Shown piece after piece: positions 23,152-55,048 of a stretch of DNA of 64,000 nucleotides. Location: the sequence record NC_061444.1, one strand, 5' to 3'. Each line of letters opens with the position of its first letter. Position 1 is the stretch's first letter. A program made the position numbers and the translations under genes. Under the pieces are notes generated by a model, which saw only the letters and a list, made by a program, of their open reading frames with translations, had not been told where the DNA came from and searched no databases.

Positions 23152-24138
23152 TTAAAGTTTACGCAGACCTTTCTTAATCGCAGCATTGACTTGCGCTGCT
23201 GACGGGTCTTTCGTTGCAAACAGATCGATAACGTTCGTGATTGAGTCCAGCTCGCCAAGATGAATCTGGACGTTCTGCACTTTCTTCAAGTGGTCAGCGA
23301 TGAATGTCATCAGCCAGCCCTTCTGCTTCATGACAACAGCAACTTCAAGGTCCTTGTATGAGAACGAGAACTTATTGCCGGTAGCATGAAGCAATTTCGC
23401 AGCACCCGGAATAGGCTCGACAGCGCGGATAAACTCCGGCGCATACTGTCGGGCAGTCTTAGTGCGTAAGACAGAGTACGCTGGGTCAAACGTCCGCAGC
23501 TTGCTCTTAACTTTAGGCTTAGACCCAGGAGTACCGCCAGTCTGTTTCTGATCTGGGTTCTGCGTCCACGTCAGACCTTCATCCAGACAGTTCTGGCCGG
23601 TCATAGCTTCCTGAATGATGACACGCTTATCTTTGCCTGTCTCAACATTCTTCTCAGCTTCTGCCTCGGTCTTGAACGGACCTTTGACGATGATATCGTT
23701 GGCGTGACGAGTGTGGTCGATAACGTACCACTTGTTGCGTTCGATCTTACCGTTCGCGTCTACGGTGTTAGCGCGTACAGGACGGGTCGTTTTCGCAGGC
23801 GCGTTCTGCTGAATAGCGACAGGCTTGATCTTGATTGCACGAAGACCGTTGATCGTAGCCACCAGCGTCTTGGCTTTATACAAGTTCTTCATCGCAGTGA
23901 CAAGATTCTTGCCAGCAGCTTTCTTGGCCAATGCGGTGGTTGCATCAGCATCGTTCAGTACGTCGAGAACGGCAGACAGCTTTGCAGTGTCCAGTTCTTT
24001 GATCTTCACCAGCTCGTCGATCTTCTTAACGATAAGTTTTGCGTTCTTACCGAAGAGGATTTCAGCATTGGCGATCTGCTTCTTGTTGGCTGCGGAGACT
24101 GATACCACCGCGCCTGAAGGTAGAGTGATTTCGTGCAT
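23152..24138 (-). CDS. Basic Lys/Ala-rich protein, putative internal head protein
   Basis: 328 aa; N-terminus MHEITLPSGAVVSVSA carries the shared S-x-S-A motif. Confidence 0.5.
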   Translation of the reverse strand: MHEITLPSGAVVSVSAANKKQIANAEILFGKNAKLIVKKIDELVKIKELDTAKLSAVLDVLNDADATTALAKKAAGKNLVTAMKNLYKAKTLVATINGLRAIKIKPVAIQQNAPAKTTRPVRANTVDANGKIERNKWYVIDHTRHANDIIVKGPFKTEAEAEKNVETGKDKRVIIQEAMTGQNCLDEGLTWTQNPDQKQTGGTPGSKPKVKSKLRTFDPAYSVLRTKTARQYAPEFIRAVEPIPGAAKLLHATGNKFSFSYKDLEVAVVMKQKGWLMTFIADHLKKVQNVQIHLGELDSITNVIDLFATKDPSAAQVNAAIKKGLRKL

Positions 24139-24147
24139 TGCTGTTCC

Positions 24148-24696
24148 TTATCGTTTCTTGGTCCAGTTGTTCTGCTTCACTGGAGCGGGTGCGGGTGCGG
24201 TGTTCTCTTCGGAGATTTCGTCTTCTTCGACTTCATCTTCGTCATCCTGCTCAGGCTCAGGTTCAGCTTCTTTGACAGGAGCAGGAACAATCACTGAGGC
24301 AGCGAGAGGCGCTTGAGACACAGTATTTACAGTAGCGACAGGCTCTGCTTCTGCGGCCTTACGCGCTTCTGCTACTTCGCCTACAGCATGTGCGTGAATC
24401 ACATCCACAGTAAGCAGCGCACCCTTCTCTTTCAGGATAGCATCTGCTTTCTCTTGATCCCACTGATCCCAAATGATATCAAGAGTCTTGTAGCCGTAGT
24501 TCATGCCCTTAGGCAGCTTACCACGACCGTTGAAAGGCAGACCGTTAGAAGGAGTAGCTGGCTCGAACTCGTCCATCATCTCCCACTTACGTTTTGCCTC
24601 GATACACTTCGGACCCCAGACACCATCGCAGGCGCCGTCGTACAGACCCATCATAGTCATGATGACCTGTAGCTTCTGATAGAACTTGTTGAGCAT
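24148..24696 (-). CDS. Peptidoglycan-binding domain protein with Pro/Glu-rich tail
   Basis: LQVIMTMMGLYDGACDGVWGPKCIEAKRKW matches the PG_binding_1 pattern. Confidence 0.6.
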   Translation of the reverse strand: MLNKFYQKLQVIMTMMGLYDGACDGVWGPKCIEAKRKWEMMDEFEPATPSNGLPFNGRGKLPKGMNYGYKTLDIIWDQWDQEKADAILKEKGALLTVDVIHAHAVGEVAEARKAAEAEPVATVNTVSQAPLAASVIVPAPVKEAEPEPEQDDEDEVEEDEISEENTAPAPAPVKQNNWTKKR

Positions 24697-24707
24697 GATG
24701 GCCTCGA

Positions 24708-25160
24708 TCAGGCTGACTTTGGCAGAGGAGGAAGTGGCTTCCCGTTAACGCGATTAAAGATTCGAGATGCACCGATACCGTCAGAGTTATACTGCTTACT
24801 GGCCTGACGGAACTCCATAGGATGCTTCTCAATCCAATCGAGAACGTTCTGCATCTGAGCAGCGGTAATGACTTTCGCCTGCACACGCTTCTGTAAGTAC
24901 AAGCGAATGCCGTGACCTGTAGCACCGCTGGTGCTTTCGACAGAGCTAACACTGCGAATAACGCTGGTAGCAGCTTTGGCTGGAGACAGACCTTTAGCAA
25001 TCAGGTCTTTCAGCTTCTTAGGGTCGGAGTTCAGAAGTTTGATGCAGTCGTTGTACTGCGTCTGGGTGATCTTACCTGCTTTCTTACGCGCAGCAAGTTC
25101 GTTCCATAAAGAGGAACGCCCAACAACTGCGGCACTTAAACTGATAGTGATTTTAGCCAT
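24708..25160 (-). CDS. Basic protein, putative internal head protein
   Basis: 150 aa; N-terminus MAKITISLSA; two similar helical repeats (ITQTQYNDCIKLL / ITAAQMQNVLDWI). Confidence 0.5.
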   Translation of the reverse strand: MAKITISLSAAVVGRSSLWNELAARKKAGKITQTQYNDCIKLLNSDPKKLKDLIAKGLSPAKAATSVIRSVSSVESTSGATGHGIRLYLQKRVQAKVITAAQMQNVLDWIEKHPMEFRQASKQYNSDGIGASRIFNRVNGKPLPPLPKSA

Positions 25161-25181
25161 GACATACTTTCCCTATTGGTG

Positions 25182-25199
25182 AAGGGGCCGAAGCCCCTT
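25182..25199 (-). terminator. GC hairpin, possible weak terminator
   Basis: AAGGGGC-TTCG-GCCCCTT after SNF2 stop; poor U-tract. Confidence 0.45.
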
Positions 25200-25204
25200 A
25201 CCTT

Positions 25205-28200
25205 TTAGACTGATTTGTTTTTCGACGCGGTCAGTTTCAACTTGTCGATACCCTGAATCGCTTTCTTGATGTTCGTGATGGTGTAGCCAGCTTTCGCAAT
25301 CTTGTTGATTCGAGCTTTCGCACCAGCAGCGTTTTTCACGAAGCCGATCCACATACCCGGTGACAGGTCGAACGTACCGAACTTACGAGTGTTAGGCACT
25401 TTCGTTCCGACGAAGCGTTTCATCTGCGGGTTAGTTTTCAGGTCAAACATAATACGCAGACGATCTTCCATCACCATTGGATATGCCTTGACGTGTTTCT
25501 TGTCAGTGGCAGTCTTATGACGCACGAGGAAGAACTGCTGCAACTGAGACTGCAACTTAACGGCCAGTTTGTAGTTGAAGCCCATGCGAGCGTGTGTCTC
25601 GTCGAAGCTATCCTGAATGAACTCCAGACGCTTCTCGGACATGCGGTCGAATGACAGTCGTTTCCCTTCGATGAAGTCGAGCATTGCAACGAAGTCATCA
25701 TAGTACGCACAGTCGTAGTAGACGTAATCACCGAACTCGGTGAAGTCGAAACTTTTCAGAGCTTTCGCATCAGGGTCAGTCGCGTCAGCATACAGAGCAA
25801 CGAATCCGTTGTACACTGTAGGCGTCAGCTCCAGCGCCATATCAGCGCCGCCCATATCGTCTACCGCAGTGATGGCACCAGGCTTAGCACGACGAGTAGT
25901 GTTGTCCAACACTTTCAGTTCAGACGGCTTACGGCGACGAACTTTCTTGGCAGCTTCCTCAACACCTTCGTTGATTGGCTTACCTTCTTCCTTGTTCGCA
26001 ACACGCTTGGCAACACGAGCAGCTTTACGCGCTTGTGCTTCCACCTTCTTCTCTGTCTCTTTCGTGTCGGCAGTCTGCGTTTCGTCGAGAACGGTGTCTT
26101 CAACTTCAACACGGTTCGCTTCGGCATTAGCACGTTTGCGGTCTTTCTCATTCGCCCACGGCTTACGCTGTTCGAAGAAACGTTTCAGGTCGTTCTTGTC
26201 TACCTTAGTAGCGATGTGAACTTTCGTCGCAGGAATCGCAACAGTCTCACCAGTACCAGCCAGACGAACACGAACGGTGCTGATAGGGCTATCGCCGCGC
26301 AGCTTACCATCAACCATACGAACAGTCACAGACACAACAACACCGTTACCGAACTCAGTCACGACAGGTGCACGATTCAGAGAATCTTTCAGCCCTTCGC
26401 CGCTAGTGAAGTTACGGTTACGTGCCCAGTCCAGAATACGCTCAGTGCCCCAGCCATTACGATCAGGGATCTTCTGGTTGGCAACGAGAGGCGTCTGCTC
26501 CATAACACGGAAGTCAGTCAGAGCTGGAGTAGCTGGCAGCGCTTGCATTGCTGCAATCGTTGTCTTACGCATCTCTTGGAACTCTTGTGACTCGATTTCG
26601 TTCAGGTCACGCTTCGCATAGAAGTATTCCCGGAAGTCATCCATCGTGTTGTTATCGATCAGCAGCTTCGCGCTCATTTTGATCGGGTCCAGTTTGTACT
26701 GGTCGAGTGCTTCGTAGCGCTGGTTGCCTTTCTCGTCGAAGCGAGTCTTCTCCAGAGTCTTCCACATCAGACGTGCAACCTTACCAACTTCTAAGGTCTT
26801 GTTCGTCATAACCCAGTCGATGAACACAACTTCACGAGCCATGTCGCCCGGCTTACCGTTCTCATCCAGCTTCGCAGCAGCAACGTCAGGACGGAAGATA
26901 CGCGCAGTAGACTGATCGTAAGTACCAGGTGACCACGGAGTATCGCAGCGGATGATACGGCTACCCATCTGCATGTTGTGGCCTTCGGAGATTGCCTGTT
27001 CGTTCGCAATCAGAATCTGAACGTTGTTGTCAGTTTTGAATGCGTCGAGGTTAGCGTCTTTGTTCTGGCCGAGCTTACCAACTTCACCGTGATACACCAC
27101 AGCAACTTTCTTGTAGTTAGCTGGCAGTGCATTGTAGATGGCGTTAGCAGCACGAACGTAACGCGTAAAGACAATCAGTTTACCCTGCACTTCCGGTTTC
27201 CAGTAGTCTGGATCATCCGGCGGCGGAGTCATTGAAGGAGGCAGCACTTGACGCTTGAACTCTTCGGACTGCTTACGTGCCAAATACTTCTGACCGTTAT
27301 AGACAGCAATGTCCAGTTCACGCGGCTCTACGCCCGGCTTCCATTCGAAGATCTGTTGCTCACCCACCATCGGGTCACGCTCAGGCTGCACTTCAAAGTG
27401 CTTCTTGATACGGTCGATAATGGTCAGTACCTTGGCAGAGGTGAAGTGCGTAACGCCCGCAGCTTCAAACGTCATACGTGCAACGTCATCACCCATTGGG
27501 TCGGTCAGCATCATCTCCATACGCTGGAAGTACATGTTCAGGTCAGCGTTACCTGCAAGCAGTGCGCCCAGGTCATCGCCTTCTTCAATCTCGTCTTCGT
27601 CGATATCAGAAGCGCTATCGCTATCACCGCCACCAGCTTCGTCGTCATCGTCGTCGCTACTGCCACCAGATTTACGCTTCGCAGCCTTAGCAGCTTCGTC
27701 CAACTTCTCCAACACTTCTGCGTACATTGCGTTGTACACTTCTTGGTGCAGAGCAGAGTTAGGAACTGACGGGTCATCGATCTCAACCTGAATGAAGGTG
27801 TCAATCGGGTTCGGCAGCATGAACGCCCAGTGCTTACGCTTGAACGAGATGAACGCTGTATGGTTTGCCATACGTGAGTGCGCACGACGAATCATTTCGA
27901 TATCGTCTTTCGCGCCGTCATACGCAACATCCAGTGAGTCACCGAACATCGCAGGCGTCATCAGTGCAGCCTGACCAACGATATCACGCACACGGTCAGT
28001 CACCAGCGTACCGGTAGCGATACGTGCATAGCGAACAGACGGAGCAGTGAAGACCGCTTTGGTGTTGAAGTGAACCTGAGAACCAGATTGACCACCAGAG
28101 AAGTTCTTAACTTTGTGCGATTCATCGAGCAGCACGTAGCTGAACTTGAAGCGGTTAACGAACTCTACAGCACCACGCACACGAACACGCACACCGCCGA

Positions 28201-31057
28201 TATCAACGTTGAACGTACCAGTTTGCAGATAGCTCAGGCCGACGATGAAGATTGTGTTACGAGGTGACTGAGAGATCACATCGTACATACGTTCTTCGCC
28301 CCACGTGTTCACAGTGTCAGCAGTGATAGGCACTGCGTTCCAACCGTTAACGATTTTGTGGAGGTCGTCACACCAGTTCGCTACGAGGTTAGACGGACAG
28401 ATGATCAGAGGACGAATGTTCTCTTCACCTAAATCGTCAAGCTCTTTGATAGTCGCAGCGATATCAGTCAGACCGATAATCGTCTTACCACCACCAGGCG
28501 CGATAAAGATTGTTGCAAAGCGCGGACGACGACGCAGTGTTTTGTGCGCTTCGACCTGATGCGGCAGTAACGCTGCACCATCTTTCAGACCCGGAATACG
28601 GATATCATCAATCGTGATACCGCTATCAGGTTTCAGGCGTTCGATCTCAGCCTCAGCGGATTCGAAAATCTCAAGAGCTTTAGGAATCACGTCGCTGTAC
28701 ATCGTGGCGAACGGCAGAATGATTTGTTGCAGACGGCCAGAGCCGGGCGCTTGTTCGCTTTCAATCAGAGAGCTAAACAGTTTCTTACGATCAGCACGTA
28801 CCAGAGACTGTGCCATTTCACGATACAGCGCACCACCGAAGTAGTTGTTGAGTCGTGCCATGTCAGACAGTTTGGACTTCTCACCCATCACGAAGTAGTG
28901 AGTGTGTGACGGCAGAGATTCGGTTGCAGCCTGAATGCTCCCCATCTCGCTCATGCTGGTGGCAATCAGGTTAGAGCCACGCAGACCAGCAGCATCGTTC
29001 AGCACACGAATCATGATGCGAAGCATGGTCAGTGCAGGACGTTCGTTTGCCAGATCAGGTACAGAGAAGTCGTTAGCGATCAGATTCTCGTACAGGTCTT
29101 TGTCCATCGGGCTTTCAGACAGGGACGCGTTTTCTGCATCCATACCGATTGCTTTACGCGCGTTCTCCACCAGCGTTTTCAGGTCAGGAACTTGTTTGTT
29201 CTTGAGCATGAACTCGTAGGTCTGACACGTCTGCGCAATGATGTTCAACAGCTCAGGCAGATTAGAACCTTCGGTGGAGTTGAACTTGATTGTGGATTCA
29301 CTCACACTCTCAACCAACTTGCCACTGCCGGATTCAACCTTAGCAGCTTCGATCATCGTGTCATACGATGGACGATACAACGCCATACCGCCAGATGCCT
29401 GATTGTGATAGATGTTGCCAATCACGTTCGTGGCTGAGCGGAAGTTCGGTGCTTCACCAGGCTCTGCGAAGTCGTAGCCTAAAGCATCAGCAACGTCCAG
29501 AGAGTTCGGCGCTTTCATACCGACAGTACGCGTTTCGTTAACTGCCAGCCCACCGCCGTTCGAGGTGTTTACGATCAGCGAGAAGTCAGGGTCGATACCG
29601 ATACACACGTCACTGAAACGAGTCAGAGACTTAGCTTTCGCCTGAATGTCACGGTCGAAGTCCAGATTCTTGTTCTGGATAGCGAACATGTTAGTACGCA
29701 GCGTGTCGTGTTCGGTAGACAGTGGAATACCTTTCTCGAACAGGTCTTCAAGCACACCGTTCAAGGAGGTTTCGTACTGCTTGACCATTTCGAGGTCAAT
29801 GTCTTCACGACGAGGCAGCACAGCCATTGTACCGTTCGGCATGATAGTCATACCGTTCTCGTCTGCGACCACATCATTCACGGCGTAACCGAACTTCTCA
29901 CGCAGCTTCTTCAATTCAGGCAGAGAAGTAGCAGACGTTACATAGCGCGGGATACGTGCAGCACGAGTGATACCAGTACGAGTAGAACCAGCAACACGGA
30001 AGTAGTAGCTTGCCCAGCCCTGGAACCAACGATACAGACACATGGTCTGAGTGTCAGCACCCTGAGAGATGTACTCAACCATCTCTTTCTCGAAGTTAAC
30101 GATCAGGCCACCTTCAACGCGAACGTCGGTAGCGAGTGCCACTTCGTTAAAATCGACAGGAGTGTCAGGACTGATCTTCATCGCCTGAATCTTACGATCA
30201 ATCATGGCCTTGCCGGGGATTGAACGAATACCGATAGTCATGAAGTCACCCAGACCATCGACTACAGGCTTCTCCAGATTGCGGAACAGGTCGATATCAA
30301 TGTTGTGCATTGAAGGGTGAATAGAACGCAGAGCAGCGTTATACACAGACCAGTCTTTGTCGAGAGGGATGCGCACCATCTTGGTGTCGAACGCATTACC
30401 GTTAGTACGGTCAACGCCGAAGATATCTTTGTAGATAGTCTTCGCAACACGAATTGCCTGTTGAGCAATGTCAGCGCTGTACGTGCGCAGGTTAGCGCTT
30501 TCGAAGTTCGCATCGTTATCAACACGAGGACGGTCGCTACCCTGATTGTTCAGAACGTTGAAGTTACCGTTCGAAGCCAGCGGGCTAGTCGGGCACGGAG
30601 TACCTGACATGATGATATCTTTACCGCCAGGGAAGCGCGTACTGTTTTCGATGATAGCACCAGAGGAAGAAGACAGGTGCTCGGCGAGAGCAGTCTTAAT
30701 CTCACGGCTCAGCTTATCACCGTTAAGCAGCATATTGATTTTCAGCGTAGACGCGTCGATGTTATTCTTAACGCGCTTCTGGAAATCTTCAGGTGCTACT
30801 TCCAGCATGTCTTCGAACTCTGCACCGTTCACAACGATGTAGTTAATCAGGTCGAAAGCCGCATAGATACGTGCCACGGTTGATGCGGTAAACACTGCGA
30901 GGGCTTCGTAGTTACGACGAGACTTCCCTGTAGCGTACATCTTCGATGTTTTCGCATCAAACTCGGGCGGCAACGGACGAATAGCAAGCGCCTGATTAAA
31001 CGTATCGGCGATTTGCTGAGTCGCTGTTGCTGACACACTAATCATCTGATTCATCAT
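25205..31057 (-). CDS. Giant SNF2/SWI2-family helicase/ATPase
   Basis: 1950 aa; PHQVEA, APGGGKT, LIICPSNLVANW, DESHKVKN, ATGT, EGHNMQ, DTPWSP, QSTARIFR; ~800-aa unknown N-terminal region starting MMNQMISVSA. Confidence 0.85.
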   Translation of the reverse strand: MMNQMISVSATATQQIADTFNQALAIRPLPPEFDAKTSKMYATGKSRRNYEALAVFTASTVARIYAAFDLINYIVVNGAEFEDMLEVAPEDFQKRVKNNIDASTLKINMLLNGDKLSREIKTALAEHLSSSSGAIIENSTRFPGGKDIIMSGTPCPTSPLASNGNFNVLNNQGSDRPRVDNDANFESANLRTYSADIAQQAIRVAKTIYKDIFGVDRTNGNAFDTKMVRIPLDKDWSVYNAALRSIHPSMHNIDIDLFRNLEKPVVDGLGDFMTIGIRSIPGKAMIDRKIQAMKISPDTPVDFNEVALATDVRVEGGLIVNFEKEMVEYISQGADTQTMCLYRWFQGWASYYFRVAGSTRTGITRAARIPRYVTSATSLPELKKLREKFGYAVNDVVADENGMTIMPNGTMAVLPRREDIDLEMVKQYETSLNGVLEDLFEKGIPLSTEHDTLRTNMFAIQNKNLDFDRDIQAKAKSLTRFSDVCIGIDPDFSLIVNTSNGGGLAVNETRTVGMKAPNSLDVADALGYDFAEPGEAPNFRSATNVIGNIYHNQASGGMALYRPSYDTMIEAAKVESGSGKLVESVSESTIKFNSTEGSNLPELLNIIAQTCQTYEFMLKNKQVPDLKTLVENARKAIGMDAENASLSESPMDKDLYENLIANDFSVPDLANERPALTMLRIMIRVLNDAAGLRGSNLIATSMSEMGSIQAATESLPSHTHYFVMGEKSKLSDMARLNNYFGGALYREMAQSLVRADRKKLFSSLIESEQAPGSGRLQQIILPFATMYSDVIPKALEIFESAEAEIERLKPDSGITIDDIRIPGLKDGAALLPHQVEAHKTLRRRPRFATIFIAPGGGKTIIGLTDIAATIKELDDLGEENIRPLIICPSNLVANWCDDLHKIVNGWNAVPITADTVNTWGEERMYDVISQSPRNTIFIVGLSYLQTGTFNVDIGGVRVRVRGAVEFVNRFKFSYVLLDESHKVKNFSGGQSGSQVHFNTKAVFTAPSVRYARIATGTLVTDRVRDIVGQAALMTPAMFGDSLDVAYDGAKDDIEMIRRAHSRMANHTAFISFKRKHWAFMLPNPIDTFIQVEIDDPSVPNSALHQEVYNAMYAEVLEKLDEAAKAAKRKSGGSSDDDDDEAGGGDSDSASDIDEDEIEEGDDLGALLAGNADLNMYFQRMEMMLTDPMGDDVARMTFEAAGVTHFTSAKVLTIIDRIKKHFEVQPERDPMVGEQQIFEWKPGVEPRELDIAVYNGQKYLARKQSEEFKRQVLPPSMTPPPDDPDYWKPEVQGKLIVFTRYVRAANAIYNALPANYKKVAVVYHGEVGKLGQNKDANLDAFKTDNNVQILIANEQAISEGHNMQMGSRIIRCDTPWSPGTYDQSTARIFRPDVAAAKLDENGKPGDMAREVVFIDWVMTNKTLEVGKVARLMWKTLEKTRFDEKGNQRYEALDQYKLDPIKMSAKLLIDNNTMDDFREYFYAKRDLNEIESQEFQEMRKTTIAAMQALPATPALTDFRVMEQTPLVANQKIPDRNGWGTERILDWARNRNFTSGEGLKDSLNRAPVVTEFGNGVVVSVTVRMVDGKLRGDSPISTVRVRLAGTGETVAIPATKVHIATKVDKNDLKRFFEQRKPWANEKDRKRANAEANRVEVEDTVLDETQTADTKETEKKVEAQARKAARVAKRVANKEEGKPINEGVEEAAKKVRRRKPSELKVLDNTTRRAKPGAITAVDDMGGADMALELTPTVYNGFVALYADATDPDAKALKSFDFTEFGDYVYYDCAYYDDFVAMLDFIEGKRLSFDRMSEKRLEFIQDSFDETHARMGFNYKLAVKLQSQLQQFFLVRHKTATDKKHVKAYPMVMEDRLRIMFDLKTNPQMKRFVGTKVPNTRKFGTFDLSPGMWIGFVKNAAGAKARINKIAKAGYTITNIKKAIQGIDKLKLTASKNKSV

Positions 31058-31548
31058 TCACCCAGTTTGGTATAGTTGTCGATTACTGATTGCCACACGC
31101 TTGGAACAGGCAAGCGACGATCAGCAGCAAGATCAGACAGCACTACTGCCAGAGCGTAGGCTCGAAGAGGGTTCAACCCTTCAAACTTATCGCGCGTAAA
31201 CACAGACATGAGTTGATCGTTTGTCAGTGTCTGATATTGCAGGCGATACTCGGACAGATAAGCGCGGTACTTGCCGTCATCAACTGGCGTTGTATCAGGT
31301 ACGCTCTGAATGGACAGCAATGCTTTCGCAAGGGCATCCATAATCAAGAGCAGATCAGCCTGATCAAACGGAGTGATATCCGGCACGTTAGAACGGCCCA
31401 ACAGTTCGAGAACTGATTGAGGCAGTTGAATAGGCTCTCGCGCCTCAGAGATAGACTTCATGATTTCTCCAGCCGCATTTGCGTAGCGCTTATCGCTAGT
31501 CGCAATACCGGACAGCAGAGTATGAAGCCGCGAGTTTACGTCAATCAC
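31054..31548 (-). CDS. Hypothetical protein
   Basis: Start moved to GTG 31548 (AGGAGA RBS, removes the 218-nt overlap with the upstream gene); 164 aa. Confidence 0.6.
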   Translation of the reverse strand: MIDVNSRLHTLLSGIATSDKRYANAAGEIMKSISEAREPIQLPQSVLELLGRSNVPDITPFDQADLLLIMDALAKALLSIQSVPDTTPVDDGKYRAYLSEYRLQYQTLTNDQLMSVFTRDKFEGLNPLRAYALAVVLSDLAADRRLPVPSVWQSVIDNYTKLGE

Positions 31549-33625: not shown

Positions 33626-34432
33626 TTAGAAGCTATGACCTTTGATGATCGATGCAATCTTACCGTAGTATTCCGGGCTGTAGCGGAACACTTTAGCGTA
33701 GTAGTCCAGCAGCTTCGGTACGTCAACGCCAGCAGCAGCAGACACGCTATCGATCTCAGGGAACTGGCGCTCGTCCAGCTCGTTACCGGACAGCACAGCT
33801 ACCATGCTCATGGAGCTAATCTGTTCTTCATTACCCTGCTCGTCAACAACGAGGAAGGTGTTGTCGTCAGTTACGTTCGCAGCAACGAAGCCAACTTTCA
33901 GAACACCGCTGTTAGACACGAAGCTAACCATGTCACCGCCAACAGCGCCGGCCAGAATCAGATCGTTACGCGCAATCGCCTGTGCCAGAGTAGGCATAGA
34001 GGTTGACAGAGAAACAGCAGAAGCACCAGACACGGAACGAATCATATCGATCAGTTCAACGTTGTCGTTCGCGCTGCTCTCACGTACCAGTACGTCTTCA
34101 CCGCTTTCGCTGCGACGAATCGCCCACATGCGTTCTGACTTGTCCATGTACATGTTCTTGGACAGCGCCTGGAACTCGTCACCCATCTGAGACACAGGGA
34201 TAACGTCCTGCATACGATTCAGAATGGTGCGGACGAAGCTGGTGGTTTTACCCTGCTCGATCATGGATGACGCACCTTCAACAGGCATGTATTCACGATT
34301 GCAGGAAGCGCTTACGATAGCGCCGAAGTTGTCAGCGATGTTTTCACCGACGTTGTGAGTCACTTGCACGATAGCCACGCTCTGGGAGTCGTTGAGCGCG
34401 TCAATCTGTTTGATGAAAGCCTTCATTGTCAT
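33626..34432 (-). CDS. Hypothetical, probably head-associated structural protein
   Basis: 268 aa; AGGAGA RBS; preceded by motif B; internal SAVSLS and IDSVSA resemble the shared S-x-S motif. Confidence 0.5.
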   Translation of the reverse strand: MTMKAFIKQIDALNDSQSVAIVQVTHNVGENIADNFGAIVSASCNREYMPVEGASSMIEQGKTTSFVRTILNRMQDVIPVSQMGDEFQALSKNMYMDKSERMWAIRRSESGEDVLVRESSANDNVELIDMIRSVSGASAVSLSTSMPTLAQAIARNDLILAGAVGGDMVSFVSNSGVLKVGFVAANVTDDNTFLVVDEQGNEEQISSMSMVAVLSGNELDERQFPEIDSVSAAAGVDVPKLLDYYAKVFRYSPEYYGKIASIIKGHSF

Positions 34433-38027: not shown

Positions 38028-38064
38028 GATCATCCTCTACTGGGTCTAGTAATCATATCGAGTG

Positions 38065-38072
38065 AAAATTAG
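38065..38072 (-). promoter_or_regulatory. Putative phage promoter motif B (CTAATTT)
   Basis: CTAATTTT, 38 nt upstream of start 38027. Confidence 0.5.
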
Positions 38073-38871: not shown

Positions 38872-38938
38872 GGTTATATCCTCAAGTTACAATTGAACTT
38901 TCGTCCTGTGGACATTAAGTTTTGAAATCAGCATGTAA

Positions 38939-38945
38939 AAATTAG
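38939..38945 (-). promoter_or_regulatory. Putative phage promoter motif B (CTAATTT)
   Basis: CTAATTTTT, 68 nt upstream of H1-like gene. Confidence 0.45.
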
Positions 38946-44403: not shown

Positions 44404-45315
44404 TTACTTGCCCAGACGTTTGAACGTAACACCCTTCTCACCCTGAGTGAACTTAATAACGCCAGGGACTTCAAAGCCATTTGCCGTTTTCTGCACTGGG
44501 ATATTTTTATCCTCAAGGTGCATACGCAGCTCAGTCATAACAATGTTGTTCTTGCCTATGGCCTTGCCTTTGAGATCTTTGGTATCGTATTTAACAGAAC
44601 CTGATTTCTTGTTCTGATCAAAATTGATACCTACAGTTTTAAGCATCTTCGGCAGAGACTTATTGACTTTTGCAGCCAGTGTAGCCGGGTTCATTTCCAC
44701 TGGTTTCTTCGCAGCGCGCTTTTTAGCAGATGGAGCTTTCGCGTCTGCTTTGGCCTTGCGAGTTGCAGGCGTGCTGGCTTTGCCTGCGGTCAACTTTTCG
44801 GCCTTCATGAATACAGGCTTGAATGTACCGCGCTTGCCAGTAATACCGAACTCAGTCAGCTTGATACCGCGAACAGTTTTCAGAGCCTTGGCCAGACCCG
44901 GACCTGACATTACGATATCAGATGCAGACAGCGGAAGGTTCAGTCCACCGAAACCGTGTTTCTTCGCGTGGGCATTCGCTTCTTTGATCAGCTTCTTAGC
45001 CTGCTTGATATCCGCAGACGATTTAGCTTTCTCGGTCTTATAGGTTTCGCGCAACGCAGTCTTACGCGGGCCTTTAGGAGTTTGTTGTGCTTTGGTAAAA
45101 GCGGTCGCAGCTTTGATACGTGAAGACATACCAGACACAGCGGCAGTTTTCGCTTTCTTCAACAGACCGACAACAGCCTGCAATTCAGCTTTTCGCTCAG
45201 ACACAACTACGAGCGTAGTTTTGCCGCCGACTTTAGCTACCTTATAGCTTACTACCTTAACACGAGCAGACTCAGATACTAAAGAATCTGCAATATTGAT
45301 TCTAATAAGAGCCAT
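44404..45315 (-). CDS. Lys/Ala-rich basic protein, putative internal head protein
   Basis: MALIRINIADSLVSESA leader; N-terminal half paralogous to 45353..46318. Confidence 0.55.
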   Translation of the reverse strand: MALIRINIADSLVSESARVKVVSYKVAKVGGKTTLVVVSERKAELQAVVGLLKKAKTAAVSGMSSRIKAATAFTKAQQTPKGPRKTALRETYKTEKAKSSADIKQAKKLIKEANAHAKKHGFGGLNLPLSASDIVMSGPGLAKALKTVRGIKLTEFGITGKRGTFKPVFMKAEKLTAGKASTPATRKAKADAKAPSAKKRAAKKPVEMNPATLAAKVNKSLPKMLKTVGINFDQNKKSGSVKYDTKDLKGKAIGKNNIVMTELRMHLEDKNIPVQKTANGFEVPGVIKFTQGEKGVTFKRLGK

Positions 45316-45352: not shown

Positions 45353-46318
45353 TTACCAGTTAGTGTCTGTGATGTTGGACTCACCCAAAGCGCGTTTGAA
45401 AGAATCAGGAGTTAAACCGAATCTAGCCATATCGGATTTCTTAACCACCAGCTTCTGGCCCTTCTTATTGGTGAATACACCTTTACCTTTTTCGACAGTA
45501 CCGGTCCAGCCAGCAGCAGAAGTGATAGCTTTACCGCCATTCAACTCTTTCAGCATACGCTTGGACATGCGGGTGTCTTTATCCCACTGACGGGACTGCG
45601 CCTGCAACGACTGACGAGCAGCATCACGAAGCTGACCCTCAGTTTTATACTGTTCGCCTTTCGGTCCGCTTGATTTGTCATAGTGACGCCACAAGCTATT
45701 CTCGTTCTTAGGCTTAGGCTTAGCTTTCGCATTAGGTGCAGTACCCGGCTTCAATTTCTTCGCAGCAGGAGAAGCACCAATCTTATCGAACTTCTCACCA
45801 GTCGCGTATCGCGGCTTGAGTAGAGAAGGTGCACGATGCGTACCGCTCGCTTTTACCCAGAAGCTATTCGTTTTAGCTTTACCGATTTTACCAATAGTAT
45901 AATCAGGCTGGGTAGATGTGATGTACGTAGGACGCACTGTGGGATCTAAGACCTTCAAGCCTGCTTTAGCTAAGGAGGACAGTGCATCTTTAGCCAGCTT
46001 TTTGGCCGCAGCAACGTCCTTCTTGATCGTAGCATTGTTTGCTTTGATCTTGTCACGTAGCGGCCCTTTCTTACCTGCATCACGCGTAGACTTCAACTTG
46101 AGTTTAAGTTTCTCGGTGGCTTGGCTAAGTTTAGCCGCAGACAGACCAAGCTTCTTCGCGGAAGCGAGAGAAGTGGCGGCCTTTGTGACAACAGGCTTGT
46201 GCTTCGAATCAATAACGATCATAGGACCGCTAGAAGATTGTACGATGTGGTACGCAGGTTTCTTTGCAGCAGATTCGGACAACAACGTGTCCGCGATATT
46301 AATACGAATGAGTGCCAT
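45353..46318 (-). CDS. Lys/Ala-rich basic protein, putative internal head protein
   Basis: Start moved to ATG 46318 (AGGGA RBS), giving MALIRINIADTLLSESA. Confidence 0.55.
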   Translation of the reverse strand: MALIRINIADTLLSESAAKKPAYHIVQSSSGPMIVIDSKHKPVVTKAATSLASAKKLGLSAAKLSQATEKLKLKLKSTRDAGKKGPLRDKIKANNATIKKDVAAAKKLAKDALSSLAKAGLKVLDPTVRPTYITSTQPDYTIGKIGKAKTNSFWVKASGTHRAPSLLKPRYATGEKFDKIGASPAAKKLKPGTAPNAKAKPKPKNENSLWRHYDKSSGPKGEQYKTEGQLRDAARQSLQAQSRQWDKDTRMSKRMLKELNGGKAITSAAGWTGTVEKGKGVFTNKKGQKLVVKKSDMARFGLTPDSFKRALGESNITDTNW

Positions 46319-46328: not shown

Positions 46329-46934
46329 TTAGACCAGGGCTCTGCCTGGGAGATCGAAGTTTTTACCGGCTGAGTAATCACCCAGCGCTTGGTACAGGGA
46401 GTTGCGTAGCATCTGCTCAATGATATCTGAGTTGTGTGCCGAAGCGTCTTTGAAAGAGACCTCGATCGACTCAGTTCTCGGATTCACAACTGCATACCGC
46501 AGAGGACAGATAGCCTGTGCTTCACACCACGCATCGACTTTAATCTGCAAGTCAGGTGTTAATGGAATGCGGAAATCACTTAGCTGAAACACAACGCTTT
46601 GAATTGGTGGAGGGGAGGACTGAGACAGGAACTTACCGTTCACATTCAATCGCTCCATAGCGTTTGCGGCTTCATAGATCGTCTGATAGCCGTCACCGAT
46701 TGTAGTGAGGCTATTGAGCTTGAAGCTATGCGTTGTCAATCCTTTACGAATCAACTTGGCGATATTAAGCTCATAATCACCAGAGTCATCTCGCATAAAA
46801 GTGACGAACGCGTAGAAGGCGAAACCATCTTCTTCGCGTAAAAGTTTGTGATCTAATACACGAAAGCCCACGACACTTTGCAGTGCCTGGGCTGTGATTT
46901 GCGTCGCCTTAGATAGGGAGACGTAGATTTCCAT
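46329..46934 (-). CDS. Hypothetical protein with shared N-terminal peptide
   Basis: 201 aa, MEIYVSLSK. Confidence 0.6.
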   Translation of the reverse strand: MEIYVSLSKATQITAQALQSVVGFRVLDHKLLREEDGFAFYAFVTFMRDDSGDYELNIAKLIRKGLTTHSFKLNSLTTIGDGYQTIYEAANAMERLNVNGKFLSQSSPPPIQSVVFQLSDFRIPLTPDLQIKVDAWCEAQAICPLRYAVVNPRTESIEVSFKDASAHNSDIIEQMLRNSLYQALGDYSAGKNFDLPGRALV

Positions 46935-47269
46935 TAACGCAGACGGGCGAGAGCTTTCTTAGCAGCAGCCAGAGTAGGTTGGATATCGCCTTCGTCGTCG
47001 AACTCACCTTCGAAACGAATGTCGAGACCAGTCACGTTGAAACCTTCGTCTTCATCTTTGGTGATGATGCCGAAACGAGCGGTGTCGCCGGTAGCGCTGA
47101 TGAAACGCAGATCCAGAATGTCGTTCGGACCTTCGAGGTCAGACGGCATACCATCGTCGATGATCTCGAACAGAGCTTTCTTGTCCAGACCCTTGAAGAA
47201 GGCGTTCAGTGCAGGAGATGCAGACTCGGATTTAACAGCGTCGTTCAGGTTCAGTTTGATAAGAGACAT
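46934..47269 (-). CDS. Small acidic protein with shared N-terminal peptide
   Basis: 111 aa, MSLIKLNLNDAVKSESA. Confidence 0.6.
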   Translation of the reverse strand: MSLIKLNLNDAVKSESASPALNAFFKGLDKKALFEIIDDGMPSDLEGPNDILDLRFISATGDTARFGIITKDEDEGFNVTGLDIRFEGEFDDEGDIQPTLAAAKKALARLR

Positions 47270-49482: not shown

Positions 49483-49483
49483 A

Positions 49484-53274: not shown

Positions 53275-53311
53275 AGCAGGTACCTATTATTTCAGTATGA
53301 ATGATACTCGT

Positions 53312-53320: not shown

Positions 53321-53337
53321 TTTTAAAGGGTATAGAC

Positions 53338-53370
53338 AAAAAGAAGGGCCACCAGCATAGGCAGCCCTCT
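53338..53370 (-). terminator. Rho-independent terminator
   Basis: GGGCTGCC-TATGCT-GGTGGCCC-TTCTTTTT. Confidence 0.7.
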
Positions 53371-53372
53371 TT

Positions 53373-53822
53373 TCAGTAGCGTCTCGGCTTCTTAGGTTTC
53401 TTAGGCCTCGTAGATTTAGGACGCTTAATGCGTTGCAGCGCTTTACGTGCCTCTGCAATCTGACCAGACAGTGCTGCGCGTTGCTTCTTCGTCGCATCAG
53501 TATCTTGCTCAGTGCCTTTGAGTTTCTCAAGGCGATTCCACTCTTTGACCAAGCGATCCACAACAGCGGCACGGGAGACACGTTGTTGGTTGGTGCGCAC
53601 AATATCCTGTTGCGTCTTAACAGAGCGTTGAGCGTCAAGCACTTTGTTTCGTGCGGACTCTACACCTTTCGTATCACCTTCGGACTGTTTATCGTTAAGA
53701 GCTTTACGTGCAGCATTCGAACGGCGCTGTGCCCCTTTCAGGTCATCACGCGAGTTCTCTAAACTGACTTTAGCTTCTTCGAGTGGGCTTGAACGCACAC
53801 TCAAACTAACCATGATTTCCAT
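53373..53822 (-). CDS. Basic coiled-coil protein with shared N-terminal peptide
   Basis: 149 aa, MEIMVSLSV; Lys/Arg/Pro-rich C-terminal tail. Confidence 0.6.
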   Translation of the reverse strand: MEIMVSLSVRSSPLEEAKVSLENSRDDLKGAQRRSNAARKALNDKQSEGDTKGVESARNKVLDAQRSVKTQQDIVRTNQQRVSRAAVVDRLVKEWNRLEKLKGTEQDTDATKKQRAALSGQIAEARKALQRIKRPKSTRPKKPKKPRRY

Positions 53823-53828
53823 AGGACC

Positions 53829-54380
53829 TCACACAGGCTGTATGGTGAGAATTGTGTACTGACCTTCCTTACGTGTGCCAACGACTTTGAACTTATAGCC
53901 CACAGGGTAGATCCATTCTTTCTCTTCCTCTACACCCTCAATGAGATCGTCACGCCATTCTTCGTCACCAGAAAAGGCTTCTTCGAGAGGGATAGACAGG
54001 ATGTAATCTTTCAGGCGCTGGTGGTAGTTAAAGCCCTTGAGTTTGGGCGATGGTGCAGGTAAGAGTTCGAGCACAACATGAACCTCTGCGAACTTCTTGG
54101 CGATAGCCTTATCCTCAGAGAATGACATGTAACGATTCAGACGAGCGTAACCCTGTTCTTCCAGTTGCTCATTGATCCGGCTTTGCTCTTGTCGATAGAT
54201 GCCGCGATACAATGGCTTCTTAGGGACTTCGGAATACTTTCTGATAAGTTCATTCAAATCATCATCACCACCAAACGCAGAGATGATCTGAGACTTGTCG
54301 TGAATAAGACCCATCAGAACTTCTTGTTGTTCTTCTGTGTACTTAGGTACTTTTGCGCTAAGACTAACGTGAATTTCCAT
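53829..54380 (-). CDS. ADP-ribosyltransferase (R-S-E class, Alt/Mod-like) with shared N-terminal peptide
   Basis: MEIHVSLSA; LYRG, YMSFSED..IAKKFA, EEKEWIYPVGYKFKVV. Confidence 0.75.
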   Translation of the reverse strand: MEIHVSLSAKVPKYTEEQQEVLMGLIHDKSQIISAFGGDDDLNELIRKYSEVPKKPLYRGIYRQEQSRINEQLEEQGYARLNRYMSFSEDKAIAKKFAEVHVVLELLPAPSPKLKGFNYHQRLKDYILSIPLEEAFSGDEEWRDDLIEGVEEEKEWIYPVGYKFKVVGTRKEGQYTILTIQPV

Positions 54381-54397
54381 ACGTGCTCCGTAAAATG

Positions 54398-54424
54398 AAA
54401 AAGGGCAGCCGAAGCCACCCTTTT
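54398..54424 (-). terminator. Rho-independent terminator (repeated family)
   Basis: GGGTGGC-TTCG-GCTGCCC-TTTTT. Confidence 0.8.
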
Positions 54425-54511
54425 GTAGATGGCGCGCTATGCACCCGACTGTTAAGTCTACTACGGTTATTTTACCTCGCAGTAGTCAGCGAGGAGATTG
54501 GGATCACCTCC

Positions 54512-55048
54512 TCATGCTGATTGAAGATCGACAACTTCATCGTCTTCGATATCAGCGGCAGACCACGAACGAAGCACGGACGCATTGCCGCGATTGCCTG
54601 TCAACATCATTTTGATTGACGGTCGAGCATCGCGCTCTGCATAATGGTCGATAAGAGCTTTGTCATTAGCGAACCACAAAATGGAGTGACCACCTTTAGG
54701 GCAGATCAAGAATTGAGGTGGACGCTGAGGAACGTTCAACGTCATGTAGAAATCACCAGCGCCAGTAGGACCAACCATAGGCATTGGCTTCATGACCTGC
54801 ATAAAATCAGTGGCGTCTGTAAGACGTTTATCGCCCAGCAACCAGATAGCACCCTCTTCACCTTCACGCACAGCAGACAACGTGCCTTTGCGTGTAGTGA
54901 TTGAACCGAATACGTCTTGGTCAAATCGTGCAAGACCAAAGATAAGCGATGCGAGTTTCTTTAAGTCAGGCGTGGTACATGGACTTTCGATCTTCGCCAT
55001 GCCCTCAGACCCAACTGTAATCTTCGAGAGTGATACAAAGATTTCCAT
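54512..55048 (-). CDS. Hypothetical protein with shared N-terminal peptide
   Basis: 178 aa, MEIFVSLSK, first gene after motif B. Confidence 0.6.
   Translation of the reverse strand: MEIFVSLSKITVGSEGMAKIESPCTTPDLKKLASLIFGLARFDQDVFGSITTRKGTLSAVREGEEGAIWLLGDKRLTDATDFMQVMKPMPMVGPTGAGDFYMTLNVPQRPPQFLICPKGGHSILWFANDKALIDHYAERDARPSIKMMLTGNRGNASVLRSWSAADIEDDEVVDLQSA

What the first reader, a model, noticed from the sequence alone, without database searches (positions are those of the whole stretch)
23152..55048. Shared N-terminal S-x-S peptide on ~12 unrelated proteins: candidate capsid-targeting/maturation signal for an injected cargo set
Seen: five ORFs start M-(E/Q)-I-x-V-S-L-S (43894 MQIFVSLSA, 46329 MEIYVSLSK, 53373 MEIMVSLSV, 53829 MEIHVSLSA, 54512 MEIFVSLSK). 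Related leaders occur in 24708 (MAKITISLSA), 25205 (MMNQMISVSA), 23152 (..AVVSVSA), 36744 (..EVSSISA), 44404, 45353 and 46934 (..V/L/K-SESA). The bodies are unrelated (ART folds, H1-like, coiled coil, SNF2). In the five core genes the V-S-L-S codons differ synonymously (GTC AGC CTA AGT; GTC TCC CTA TCT; GTT AGT TTG AGT; GTT AGT CTT AGC; GTA TCA CTC TCG), so the peptide is what is conserved. Established: T4 internal proteins carry a ~10-aa capsid-targeting leader removed by the prohead protease, and T4/phiKZ-like proteases cut after Glu. Inference: this is an analogous but distinct Ser-x-Ser leader that loads diverse effectors into the head for delivery with the DNA. It could also be a usable packaging tag.
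Basis: partly seen in the sequence, partly recalled or inferred. Interest (0 to 1): 0.88.

Follow-up and report, generated by a model that had tools for sequence, protein, structure and literature searches.

The report
Ser-x-Ser head-loading leader on phage proteins
A giant Erwinia phage puts the same 8-16-residue N-terminal tag ending in Ser-x-Ser on about twenty unrelated proteins, and the same motif marks its capsid protein, scaffold and head protease, so the tag is most likely a new version of phage T4's signal that loads proteins into the head and is then cut off.

Summary
The window is Erwinia phage pEa_SNUABM_32 (Alexandravirus, 266 kb), record positions 124001-188000.

All 12 leaders are present as described and their codons differ synonymously.

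- S-x-S sits at two conserved sites in the major capsid protein's propeptide.
- It is three-fold over-represented in the acidic scaffold-like protein gp143.
- The leader recurs on different bodies in Yoloswag, Dickeya phage JA11, Alexandra and metagenomic relatives.
- The gp196 family and an ART-PolyVal protein sit side by side with S-x-S-type leaders on a relative's contig. They sit side by side with T4-type leaders (MKTFKQFIxE) on a T4-like contig.
- One cargo is a T4 Alt/Mod-like ADP-ribosyltransferase. The PaBG counterpart of the 1950-aa helicase is a virion band.

No proteomic data exist, so cleavage, packaging and ejection are all inferred. I found no description of this motif in the literature. 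Verdict: a new variant (P1 = Ser/Ala, not Glu) of the known capsid-targeting leader.

The parts
43894..44403 (-). gp196, 169 aa, TTG start. Class-A leader MQIFVSLS|A is encoded at 44380-44403. The body belongs to a 'YYRG' family that also occurs as a domain inside giant polyvalent proteins.
   Evidence: (the Alexandra ortholog is annotated from the TTG)
46329..46934 (-). gp199, 201 aa. Class-A leader MEIYVSLS|K at 46911-46934. The Alexandra ortholog reads MEIFVSLA|K (Ser to Ala at P1).
53373..53822 (-). gp210, 149 aa. Class-A leader MEIMVSLS|V at 53799-53822. Orthologs read MKILISLS (Alexandra), MEILISLS (Yoloswag) and MQVLISLS (JA11).
53829..54380 (-). gp211, 183 aa. Class-A leader MEIHVSLS|A at 54357-54380. 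The body is a T4 Alt/Mod-like ADP-ribosyltransferase.
   Evidence: phrog_832 'RNA polymerase ADP-ribosylase' E=2e-15 and weak DRAT; PF26816 Mod_ADP_RT on homologues; leader kept at 45% identity
54512..55048 (-). gp212, 178 aa. Class-A leader MEIFVSLS|K at 55025-55048. Body of unknown function.
44404..45315 (-). gp197, 303 aa. Class-B leader MALIRINIADSLVSES|A at 45268-45315.
45353..46318 (-). gp198, 321 aa. Class-B leader MALIRINIADTLLSES|A at 46271-46318. Its body has no BLASTP match to gp197, although the leaders are nearly identical.
46934..47269 (-). gp200, 111 aa. Class-B leader MSLIKLNLNDAVKSES|A at 47222-47269. Alexandra has ..AVKSTS|A.
23152..24138 (-). gp176, 328 aa. Leader MHEITLPSGAVVSVS|A at 24094-24138. 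The Yoloswag ortholog carries a class-B-like leader, MPLINLNLNTGVASTS|A.
24708..25160 (-). gp178, 150 aa. Leader MAKITISLS|A at 25134-25160.
25205..31057 (-). gp179, 1950-aa SNF2-type helicase. Leader MMNQMISVS|A at 31031-31057. Yoloswag has MLISTS|K and JA11 has MQIFSTS|A. The PaBG counterpart is a 221-kDa virion band.
36744..38027 (-). gp187, 427 aa. Leader MAKTAKNNEVSSISAS|V at 37980-38027, with a second conserved site LSVS|A at residues 57-60.
31054..31548 (-). gp180, 164 aa. Candidate 35-residue propeptide ending ..IMKSIS|E. The site is conserved in Yoloswag (QSIS|A) and JA11 (ESVS|A).
33626..34426 (-). gp184, 266 aa. Candidate 41-residue propeptide ending ..IVSAS|C. Yoloswag has VSES|T and JA11 has LSES|A. 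The protein holds 9 S.S against 3.7 expected.
60976..61479 (-). gp222, 167 aa. MSLLEVLFRLEFVLSES|V is a low-confidence candidate leader; its conservation was not checked.

Best explanation
The shared N-terminal peptides are propeptide leaders of a capsid-loading system like that of the T4 internal proteins, with a different protease specificity.

Two leader classes are seen:
- Class A has 8 residues: M-[EKQ]-[IV]-x-[VIL]-S-L-[S/A].
- Class B has 16 residues: M-[AS]-L-I-[KR]-[IL]-N-[IL]-x-D-x-[VL]-x-S-x-S.
Several less regular leaders also end in S-x-S.

Proposed mechanism:
1. The leader directs the protein into the assembling prohead core.
2. The head maturation protease gp145 cuts directly after the second small residue (P3 = Ser/Ala, P1 = Ser/Ala). 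gp145 is a Ser/His enzyme distantly like T4 gp21 and lies outside the window at record 111818-112597.
3. The same enzyme trims the major capsid protein (sites near residues 36 and 68), cuts its own N-terminus (..KSES|F) and fragments the acidic scaffold-like protein gp143.
4. The released cargo stays in the head and is presumably ejected with the DNA. The cargo includes an Alt/Mod-like ADP-ribosyltransferase, a Nudix hydrolase, the 1950-aa SNF2 helicase and many proteins of unknown function.

Shown from sequence: the motif, its N-terminal enrichment, selection at the peptide level, its presence in head-morphogenesis proteins, its modularity across genera, and the parallel with T4-type leaders on the same cargo families. 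Inferred: cleavage at that bond, gp145 as the enzyme, targeting, and ejection.
For: 1. N-terminal enrichment. There are 11 hits against 0.48 expected in the window and 6 against 1.76 outside it, and 20 against 1.6 with the broader motif. S.S is the top gapped dipeptide. The class-A octapeptides form the largest unsupervised cluster.

2. Selection acts on the peptide. Ser codons switch between AGY and TCN, five Leu codons are used, and upstream DNA is unrelated. The bodies show no BLASTP similarity.

3. The same motif marks the head-morphogenesis proteins.
- Capsid protein..LALSES|TGEINA and ..VHSHS|G. Both regions keep S-x-[SA] across about 100 homologues, with A-x-A-type sequences in the PaBG clade. 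The HK97-fold body aligns from about residue 70. That fits the roughly 20% mass loss of the PaBG capsid protein (PMC7412058).
- Protease: the N-terminus carries S-x-S-F in about 30 of 40 homologues, with a variable middle residue, inside a disordered segment. T4 gp21 likewise has its own motif at LIE-9 (PMC9026906).
- gp143: 24 S.S against 8.0 expected, p<0.0005, the strongest excess in the genome. Its D-S-E-S repeats are conserved in Yoloswag and JA11. S-E-S in this phage aligns with A-E-A in relatives.

4. Modularity.
- Yoloswag, JA11, Alexandra and a 49%-identity metagenomic relative all carry class-A leaders on different bodies. The logo from 34 instances is.
- The PaBG Nudix ortholog lacks the leader.
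- The Yoloswag ortholog of gp176 has a class-B leader.

5. Cross-system parallel.
- On a T4-like contig (T4-type portal and gp19 tail tube), the gp196 family and a neighbouring ART-PolyVal protein sit in a row of seven genes that all start MKTFKQFIxE.
- On a relative's contig the same two families are also adjacent, and there they start M-x-I-Q-L-S-[LM]-S.
- Distant gp211 homologues lie next to a T4 gp13-like gene and carry ..VFVIRE.

6. The cargo is plausible. It includes an Alt/Mod-like ART, and the PaBG giant helicase is a virion band.

7. The predicted gp145 structure (pLDDT 86) has T4 gp21 (5jbl) as its only specific PDB match. H124 and S181 are invariant.
Against: - There is no virion proteome or N-terminal sequence for any phage that carries these leaders, so cleavage, packaging and ejection are all inferred.
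- The structural match of gp145 to T4 gp21 is weak (E=0.05, TM 0.34/0.48), and no Pfam protease family matches it.
- S-x-S also occurs in proteins unlikely to be substrates, so the tripeptide alone is not sufficient.
- Capsid site 1 is shifted in one subclade.
- PaBG, the only relative with proteomic data, has few class-A-like leaders.
- Three class-A genes (gp122, gp237, gp246) lie among nucleotide-metabolism and replication genes, so their expression timing may not suit prohead assembly.
- An 8-residue leader could simply be the extended P8-P1 recognition site, without a separate targeting role.
Confidence: 0.7

Rival explanations
1. The peptide is only a cleavage site and pro-peptide, not a targeting signal. 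The leaders are removed by the prohead protease, for instance to keep toxic enzymes inactive or simply as the extended P8-P1 recognition sequence. Incorporation into the head would then depend on other parts of each protein or on co-assembly.
For: - Class A has only 8 residues, all within the range a protease groove can read.
- In T4 the targeting and processing determinants are separable within the leader (PMC9026906).
- In P1, 9 residues of DarB were not enough for packaging and 30 were (PMC9024508).
Against: - Residues well upstream of P4 are conserved: E/K2 and I3 in class A, and the whole L-I-K-[IL]-N-L segment in class B.
- Unrelated bodies of 78 to 1950 residues are unlikely to share any other incorporation determinant.
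- The same cargo families use a bona fide T4-type targeting leader elsewhere.
Confidence: 0.15
2. The S-x-S sites are cut by a different protease: the HExxH metallopeptidase gp144 encoded next to gp145, the 'peptidase' gp218 in the window (58759-59733), or a host enzyme.
For: - gp144 has a KMPT-N domain and a conserved HELAH motif, and it lies between the protease and the scaffold-like gene.
- gp145's assignment rests on a PHROG label and a weak structural match.
Against: - All characterised maturation proteases of tailed phages with this gene order are assemblin-fold Ser/His enzymes (established knowledge).
- gp145 has an invariant His and Ser, and its own conserved S-x-S-F N-terminus.
- The gp144 relatives gp135 and gp151 themselves carry S-x-S leaders, so they look like cargo rather than the processing enzyme.
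- At the corresponding position (between the scaffold-like gene and the genes upstream of it) PaBG encodes gp83, which aligns poorly with gp144 and shows no HExxH motif in the alignment; PaBG's protease gene lies elsewhere in its genome. PaBG still keeps the motif in its capsid protein and protease.
Confidence: 0.06
3. The peptide is not cleaved. It would be a retained N-terminal strand for docking to a common partner, or a translation or stability signal unrelated to the capsid.
For: - No experimental N-termini exist.
- The alternating hydrophobic/polar pattern would suit strand addition to a partner.
Against: - Conservation stops exactly after the second Ser, and the next residue is free.
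- The same tripeptide in the capsid propeptide, the protease N-terminus and the scaffold-like protein is not explained.
- Upstream RNA is not conserved and codons vary, which argues against an RNA-level signal.
Confidence: 0.05
4. The pattern is chance, or a remnant of recent gene duplication or 5'-end recombination.
For: - Many of the genes are neighbours in two clusters (43.9-47.3 kb and 53.4-55.0 kb), as paralogue arrays are.
- gp197 and gp198 both match one Alexandra protein.
Against: - The statistics are given.
- The bodies are unrelated.
- Two-step Ser codon switches rule out recent DNA copying.
- The leader is conserved across four genera on different bodies.
Confidence: 0.02

Closest known systems
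Phage T4 capsid targeting sequence (CTS) of internal proteins IPI-III and Alt, removed by prohead protease gp21
   Same: - A short N-terminal leader (7-19 residues in T4, 8-16 here) is shared by unrelated, dispensable-looking proteins.
- The genes are clustered in variable arrays.
- The leader ends in the motif that also marks the capsid protein, the scaffold and the protease's own N-terminus.
- An Alt/Mod-like ADP-ribosyltransferase is among the cargo.
- The same cargo families (gp196 family, ART-PolyVal) are found with either leader type.
   Different: - The cleavage motif is Ser/Ala-x-Ser/Ala rather than Leu/Ile-x-Glu.
- The leader sequences are unrelated.
- The protease is only distantly gp21-like and carries a Cys/His-rich insertion (CxxC...CxH).
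- The host phage belongs to the PaBG/Lu11 group of jumbo phages, not the T4-like phages.
- Nothing has been tested experimentally.
phiKZ/SPN3US giant-phage head proteolysis (gp175/gp245; motif S/A/G-x-E) and their ejection proteins
   Same: - Both are jumbo myoviruses with many head-internal proteins.
- N-terminal propeptides are removed by one protease with a three-residue motif.
- A small residue sits at P3.
- Long propeptides are cut at several sites (PMC10052503).
   Different: - P1 is Glu there and Ser/Ala here.
- Most SPN3US propeptides are long (111-254 residues) and do not share one leader, and about 80% of its head proteins are uncut.
- Here a short common tag is reused on many proteins.
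Phage P1 Dar system (250-kDa DarB, N-terminal packaging signal)
   Same: - A very large helicase-containing protein is carried in the head.
- An N-terminal signal is sufficient for packaging a reporter in P1.
- A PmgG-like gene is present in this genome (PMC9024508).
   Different: - P1 Dar proteins share no consensus N-terminus.
- The DarB signal needs more than 9 residues.
- The P1 capsid protein is cut after Glu120.
- Homology of gp179 to DarB was not tested.
Herpesvirus assemblin / HK97-type prohead serine proteases
   Same: They share a Ser/His catalytic pair (invariant His and Ser in gp145), and assemblin also takes a small residue at P1 (it cuts Ala|Ser; from established knowledge, not tested here). 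Whether gp145 shares the assemblin fold rests only on its weak structural match to T4 gp21.
   Different: There is no sequence-level match, and the substrate context and leader usage are not comparable.
Polyvalent proteins of phages and conjugative elements (ART-PolyVal and related domains)
   Same: The gp196-family domain occurs inside proteins of 2000-5000 residues. ART-PolyVal genes are its neighbours. Both routes deliver effector domains together with the DNA.
   Different: Here each domain is a separate small protein with its own leader, not a fused multidomain protein.

Membership tests
T4-type capsid-targeting leader / internal-protein system | A short N-terminal peptide is shared by proteins with unrelated bodies | tested here: met
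   Eight class-A and 3-4 class-B leaders plus others; the bodies have no BLASTP similarity
T4-type capsid-targeting leader / internal-protein system | The leader ends in the resident prohead protease's cleavage motif, which also occurs in the capsid protein, the scaffold and the protease itself | tested here: met
   S-x-S in the capsid propeptide (two sites), at the protease N-terminus (about 30 of 40 homologues) and in scaffold-like gp143 (24 against 8 expected). This is sequence evidence only.
T4-type capsid-targeting leader / internal-protein system | The cleavage motif is Leu/Ile-x-Glu | tested here: not met
   P1 is Ser (31/34) or Ala (3/34) and P3 is Ser (32/34). The T4-type motif is seen only in homologues from T4-like contigs.
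T4-type capsid-targeting leader / internal-protein system | The proteins are present in virions with the leader removed, and the leader suffices to package a foreign protein | not testable with these tools
   Indirect evidence only: the PaBG helicase counterpart is a virion band, and PaBG virion proteins are processed (PMC7412058)
T4 gp21-like / assemblin-fold prohead serine protease (for gp145) | Assemblin-like fold with a catalytic His and Ser | tested here: inconclusive
   AF2 model pLDDT 86. T4 gp21 (5jbl) is the top and only specific Foldseek hit, but it is weak (prob 0.82, E=0.05, TMt 0.48). H124 and S181 are invariant. No Pfam hit. PHROG label 'head maturation protease'.
phiKZ/SPN3US-type protease substrates | Cleavage after S/A/G-x-Glu | tested here: not met
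   Glu is not found at P1 of the leaders; it occurs at P2 (S-E-S)
Sec/lipoprotein signal peptide | A positively charged n-region, a hydrophobic core of 10 or more residues, then A-x-A | tested here: not met
   The leaders have 8-16 residues without a hydrophobic core. A true signal peptide (gp294, MKFTSIAIALVMSASASA) looks different.
T4 Alt/Mod ADP-ribosyltransferases (for cargo gp211) | A profile match to the family and R / S-x-S / E-x-E type motifs | tested here: met
   phrog_832 E=2e-15; PF26816 Mod_ADP_RT on homologues (weak on P0177); conserved PLYRG, S-F-S-ED and E-K-E-W. Activity not tested.

The most novel reading that the evidence does not exclude
PaBG-group jumbo phages use a previously undescribed prohead-protease specificity (Ser/Ala-x-Ser/Ala, cut after the second small residue) together with a portable 8-residue tag, M-E-I-x-V-S-L-S, that by itself loads any protein into the head. 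Evolution moves the same effector families between this tag and the T4-type tag to match the resident protease. The tag would therefore define, from sequence alone, the complete injected-protein repertoire of these phages and of uncultured relatives.
Probability: 0.5. Interest if true: 0.7.

Novelty: new variant of a known kind. Interest (0 to 1): 0.62.

Why it matters
- **Reading the cargo from sequence.** If confirmed, the motif lets one read the head-internal, probably injected, protein set of a whole group of jumbo phages directly from genomes and metagenomes. That group includes Alexandravirus, Yoloswagvirus, Salmondvirus and PaBG-like phages. Most of these proteins are otherwise 'hypothetical'.
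- **A third specificity class.** It would add a third specificity class for prohead proteases, alongside L/I-x-E (T4) and S/A/G-x-E (phiKZ/SPN3US).
- **Evolution of leaders.** It shows that capsid-loading leaders are exchangeable modules that track the protease, while cargo families move between phage lineages.
- **Practical use.** It offers a very short candidate packaging tag for putting reporter proteins into Erwinia and Dickeya jumbo phages.
- **Annotation.** It corrects several annotations, including the gp196 start and the 'ATPase' label on gp143.

Tried and rejected
- **DNA-level signal.** Upstream regions of the leader genes are unrelated. A TAATTTTCAC-like motif lies upstream of a few of them but is not enriched in the window (10 matches against 18.6 expected). 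I rejected it as an explanation and left it as a side note.
- **Paralogy.** All-against-all BLASTP of the bodies found nothing except gp135/gp151.
- **Domain annotation of cargo bodies.** Pfam, even at E up to 5, and PHROGs gave no function for gp176, 178, 196-200, 210 or 212. The H1-like proteins gp183 and gp188 carry no leader.
- **PaBG whole-genome scan.** I scanned 250 of 258 kb. My simple gene caller was too inaccurate for statistics: it recovered 281 of 336 stops and 180 starts on the control genome. No class-A cluster was found, and only one or two class-A-like starts.
- **Literature.** Seven searches found no virion proteome for Alexandra, Yoloswag, Y3, AD1 or the JA phages. No paper links this phage group to a cleavage motif. 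The Y3 and phiRSL1 proteomic papers are not in the library.
- **Solved structures.** No close capsid protein or protease structure reveals a mature N-terminus. The only hit is the phage G capsid protein, 6wkk.
- **Foldseek of the protease.** The match to T4 gp21 is weak, so fold membership is left inconclusive.

Full report
**Identity of the window.** The window is identical to Erwinia phage pEa_SNUABM_32 (NC_061444.1, Alexandravirus, 265,891 bp), record positions 124001-188000, with all genes on the minus strand. I fetched the rest of the genome with its 336 annotated genes so that the motif could be tested genome-wide. The phage belongs to the PaBG/Lu11 group of jumbo myoviruses, with phiRSL1 and BcepSauron as more distant relatives.

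**Observation.**
- Five ORFs start M-(E/Q)-I-x-V-S-L-S. The first (43894-44403) uses a TTG start that RefSeq omitted here but annotated in phage Alexandra.
- Three ORFs share a 16-residue leader ending S-E-S (gp197, gp198, gp200).
- gp176, gp178, gp179 and gp187 end their N-terminal peptides in S-x-S.
- The quoted codons are exact. Ser alternates between AGY and TCN, Leu uses five codons, and the 45 nt upstream are unrelated. What is conserved is therefore the peptide.
- Without the leader, the bodies have no BLASTP similarity to each other.

**Is it more than chance?**
- In the 264 genes outside the window, which played no part in defining the pattern, there are 6 against 1.76 (p=0.009). This count misses gp237 (MEIYVSLSQ) and gp246 (MEMLVSLSH).
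- S.S is the most N-terminally enriched of the gapped dipeptides tested.
- Unsupervised clustering of the first eight residues of 3109 candidate ORF starts returns eight class-A leaders, all annotated genes, as the largest cluster. Three lie outside the window: the Nudix hydrolase gp122, gp237 and gp246.

**What the motif is tied to.** The same tripeptide marks the head-morphogenesis proteins, which lie outside the window.
- *Capsid protein gp141.* It has ..GDLALSES|TGEINA (residues 33-36) and ..NIVHSHS|G (64-68). Among 102 homologues, both regions keep S-x-[S/A]. One subclade has the first site shifted a few residues, and the PaBG clade has A-x-A-type sequences at the second. The only solved relative, the phage G capsid protein, aligns from about residue 70 onward. 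That places the fold's start just after the second site. It also matches the roughly 20% mass loss reported for the PaBG capsid protein (PMC7412058).
- *Protease gp145.* It begins MTQTVKSES|FD. In an alignment of 40 homologues down to about 30% identity, S-x-S-F is present in about 30, and the middle residue varies freely. In the AF2 model (pLDDT 86) this segment is disordered. T4 gp21 likewise carries its own cleavage motif at residue 9 (PMC9026906).
- *gp143.* This 673-residue acidic protein lies between the protease and the capsid gene and is labelled 'ATPase'. It has 24 S.S against 8.0 expected from shuffles of its own sequence, the strongest excess in the genome. Its D-S-E-S repeats and several other sites are conserved in Yoloswag and JA11. 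That pattern is expected of a scaffold that is chopped up and expelled.
- *Ser/Ala interchange.* S-E-S in this phage aligns with A-E-A in relatives (gp143). S-V-S aligns with A-E-A in PaBG (gp151). One Alexandra leader ends S-L-A. The specificity is therefore better written Ser/Ala-x-Ser/Ala.

**The protease.**
- gp145 matches PHROG 'head maturation protease' but no Pfam family.
- Its homologues share an invariant His and Ser and a Cys/His-rich insertion (CxxC...CxH).
- T4 gp21 (5jbl) is the top and only specific structural match, and it is weak.
- I treat gp145 as the enzyme by position, by conservation and by analogy, not by proof.

**Modularity across relatives.**
- Yoloswag has MEIVVSLSA on a 717-residue protein, MEKVVSLSA on a 545-residue protein, and two more.
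- JA11 has nine class-A starts in the equivalent region.
- Alexandra has five, and a different small protein sits in place of the ART gp211.
- A metagenomic relative with 49% capsid protein identity has four in its head module, and its protease begins MQSIS|F.
- The PaBG ortholog of the Nudix hydrolase lacks the leader.
- The Yoloswag ortholog of gp176 carries a class-B-like leader instead.
- From 34 distinct instances the logo is M-[EKQ]-[IV]-x-[VIL]-S-L-[S/A], followed by an unconstrained residue.
- Aligning window proteins with their Yoloswag and JA11 orthologs shows conserved sites in gp179, gp187, gp199 and gp210. It also reveals two longer candidate propeptides, in gp180 (35 residues) and gp184 (41 residues).

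**The cross-system parallel.**
- A full-library search with gp196 found 81 relatives. Many are domains inside proteins of 2000-5000 residues.
- Many others are small proteins whose short N-termini fall into two kinds..S-x-S/A, and T4-like M-K-x-F-x-Q-F-I-x-E.
- One of the T4-like kind lies in a contig with a T4-type portal, sheath and gp19 tail tube. It sits in a row of seven genes that all start MKTFKQFIxE, next to an ART-PolyVal gene.
- One of the S-x-S kind lies next to an ART-PolyVal gene in a row of four genes that start M-x-[IV]-x-L-[SG]-[LM]-S.
- Distant homologues of the ART gp211 lie beside a T4 gp13-like neck gene and share a ..RL[ST]EVFxx[LI]xE leader with a neighbouring gene.
- The same cargo families thus carry the experimentally established T4 capsid-targeting leader in T4-like phages and the S-x-S leader here. 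This is the best available argument that the two leaders do the same job.

**Cargo.**
- gp211 is a T4 Alt/Mod-like ADP-ribosyltransferase. In T4, Alt is loaded into the head and loses a 7-residue propeptide.
- gp179 is a 1950-residue SNF2-type helicase. The PaBG counterpart is the 221-kDa top band of the virion gel.
- The other bodies have no assignable function.
- The lysine-rich, H1-like proteins gp183 and gp188 do not carry the leader.

**Mechanism proposed.**
1. The leader brings the protein into the prohead core.
2. gp145 cuts after the second small residue.
3. The same enzyme trims the capsid protein, trims itself and fragments gp143.
4. The cargo stays in the head and leaves with the DNA.

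Steps 1 and 4 and the identity of the enzyme are inferences. No proteome or N-terminal sequence exists for any phage with these leaders.

**Rivals.**
- The peptide is a cleaved pro-peptide without a targeting role.
- Another protease does the cutting. gp144 next door has a conserved HELAH motif, although its relatives gp135 and gp151 carry leaders themselves.
- The peptide is an uncleaved docking strand.
- The pattern is chance or paralogy, which the tests above exclude.

**Comparison and novelty.** The system works like the T4 CTS/internal-protein system and resembles phiKZ/SPN3US head proteolysis. It fails the defining cleavage motif of both, because P1 is Ser/Ala rather than Glu. P1 DarB offers another parallel, a giant helicase-containing protein with an N-terminal packaging signal, but P1 proteins share no common leader. 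No paper in the searchable library describes this motif or these leaders. I class it as a new variant of a known kind, of solid interest to phage biologists but not a new principle.

Noticed in passing
outside the window: record NC_061444.1 108591-110612 (gp143): The gene annotated 'ATPase' encodes a 673-residue, very acidic protein between the protease and the major capsid gene. It has repeated D-S-E-S motifs and a three-fold excess of S-x-S. It looks like the scaffold or core protein, and the ATPase label is probably wrong.
   Followed up: partly
window 44313-44403: The RefSeq start of gp196 (44313) cuts off 30 residues. The TTG at 44403 abuts the stop of the upstream gene and gives MQIFVSLSA. 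The Alexandra ortholog is annotated from the equivalent TTG.
   Followed up: yes
outside the window: record 110691-111818 (gp144), 102123-102797 (gp135), 117932-119758 (gp151): Three proteins share a KMPT-N domain (PF20294). gp144, next to the protease gene, has a conserved HELAH zinc-peptidase motif. gp135 and gp151 lack that motif but carry S-x-S leaders.
   Followed up: partly
window 38062-38072, 38935-38945, 55081-55091 (minus strand): A TAATTTT(C/T/A)AC-like sequence lies 30-40 nt upstream of gp187, gp188 and gp212, and also of gp151 and gp255 outside the window. It may be a promoter. It is not enriched in a crude whole-window scan.
   Followed up: partly
window 32739-33566 (gp183) and 38200-38871 (gp188): These are two lysine-rich, histone-H1-like proteins in the head-gene region with no S-x-S leader. 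The gp183 N-terminus, M-[AP]-A-I-S-L-D-D, is conserved in Yoloswag and JA11. gp183 also has an internal K-S-L-S.
   Followed up: no
L024 6001-9538 and 11615-11980 (metagenomic T4-like contig): Seven genes start MKTFKQFIxE or a close variant. This is a textbook T4-type capsid-targeting array, and it includes a gp196-family protein and an ART-PolyVal protein.
   Followed up: partly
L027 6822-9215 (metagenomic relative, capsid protein 49% identical): The scaffold-like 797-residue protein of this relative is enriched in A-x-A (20 against 7.5 expected) rather than S-x-S. Its protease and leaders nevertheless keep S-x-S. This suggests Ser and Ala are interchangeable at P1 and P3.
   Followed up: partly
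outside the window: record 5359-5574 (gp005) and 5582-7519 (portal gp006): A 71-residue ORF annotated 'DNA ligase', just upstream of the portal gene, contains ..SVKSES|N and ..ESTS|G. The portal has RSES|S (residues 41-43) and VSQS|A (52-54), which are possible processing sites.
   Followed up: no
window 54381-54430, 25161-25204 and similar: GC-rich hairpins followed by T-runs (terminator-like) lie directly upstream of several leader genes: gp211 and gp178 in the window, and gp135 and gp246 outside it. These genes may therefore be separate transcription units.
   Followed up: no
window 58759-59733 (gp218): This gene is annotated 'peptidase', and its PaBG homologue is described as a Zn-metalloprotease. 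It lacks an HExxH motif here. Its role is unknown, and it is not the head maturation protease.
   Followed up: no
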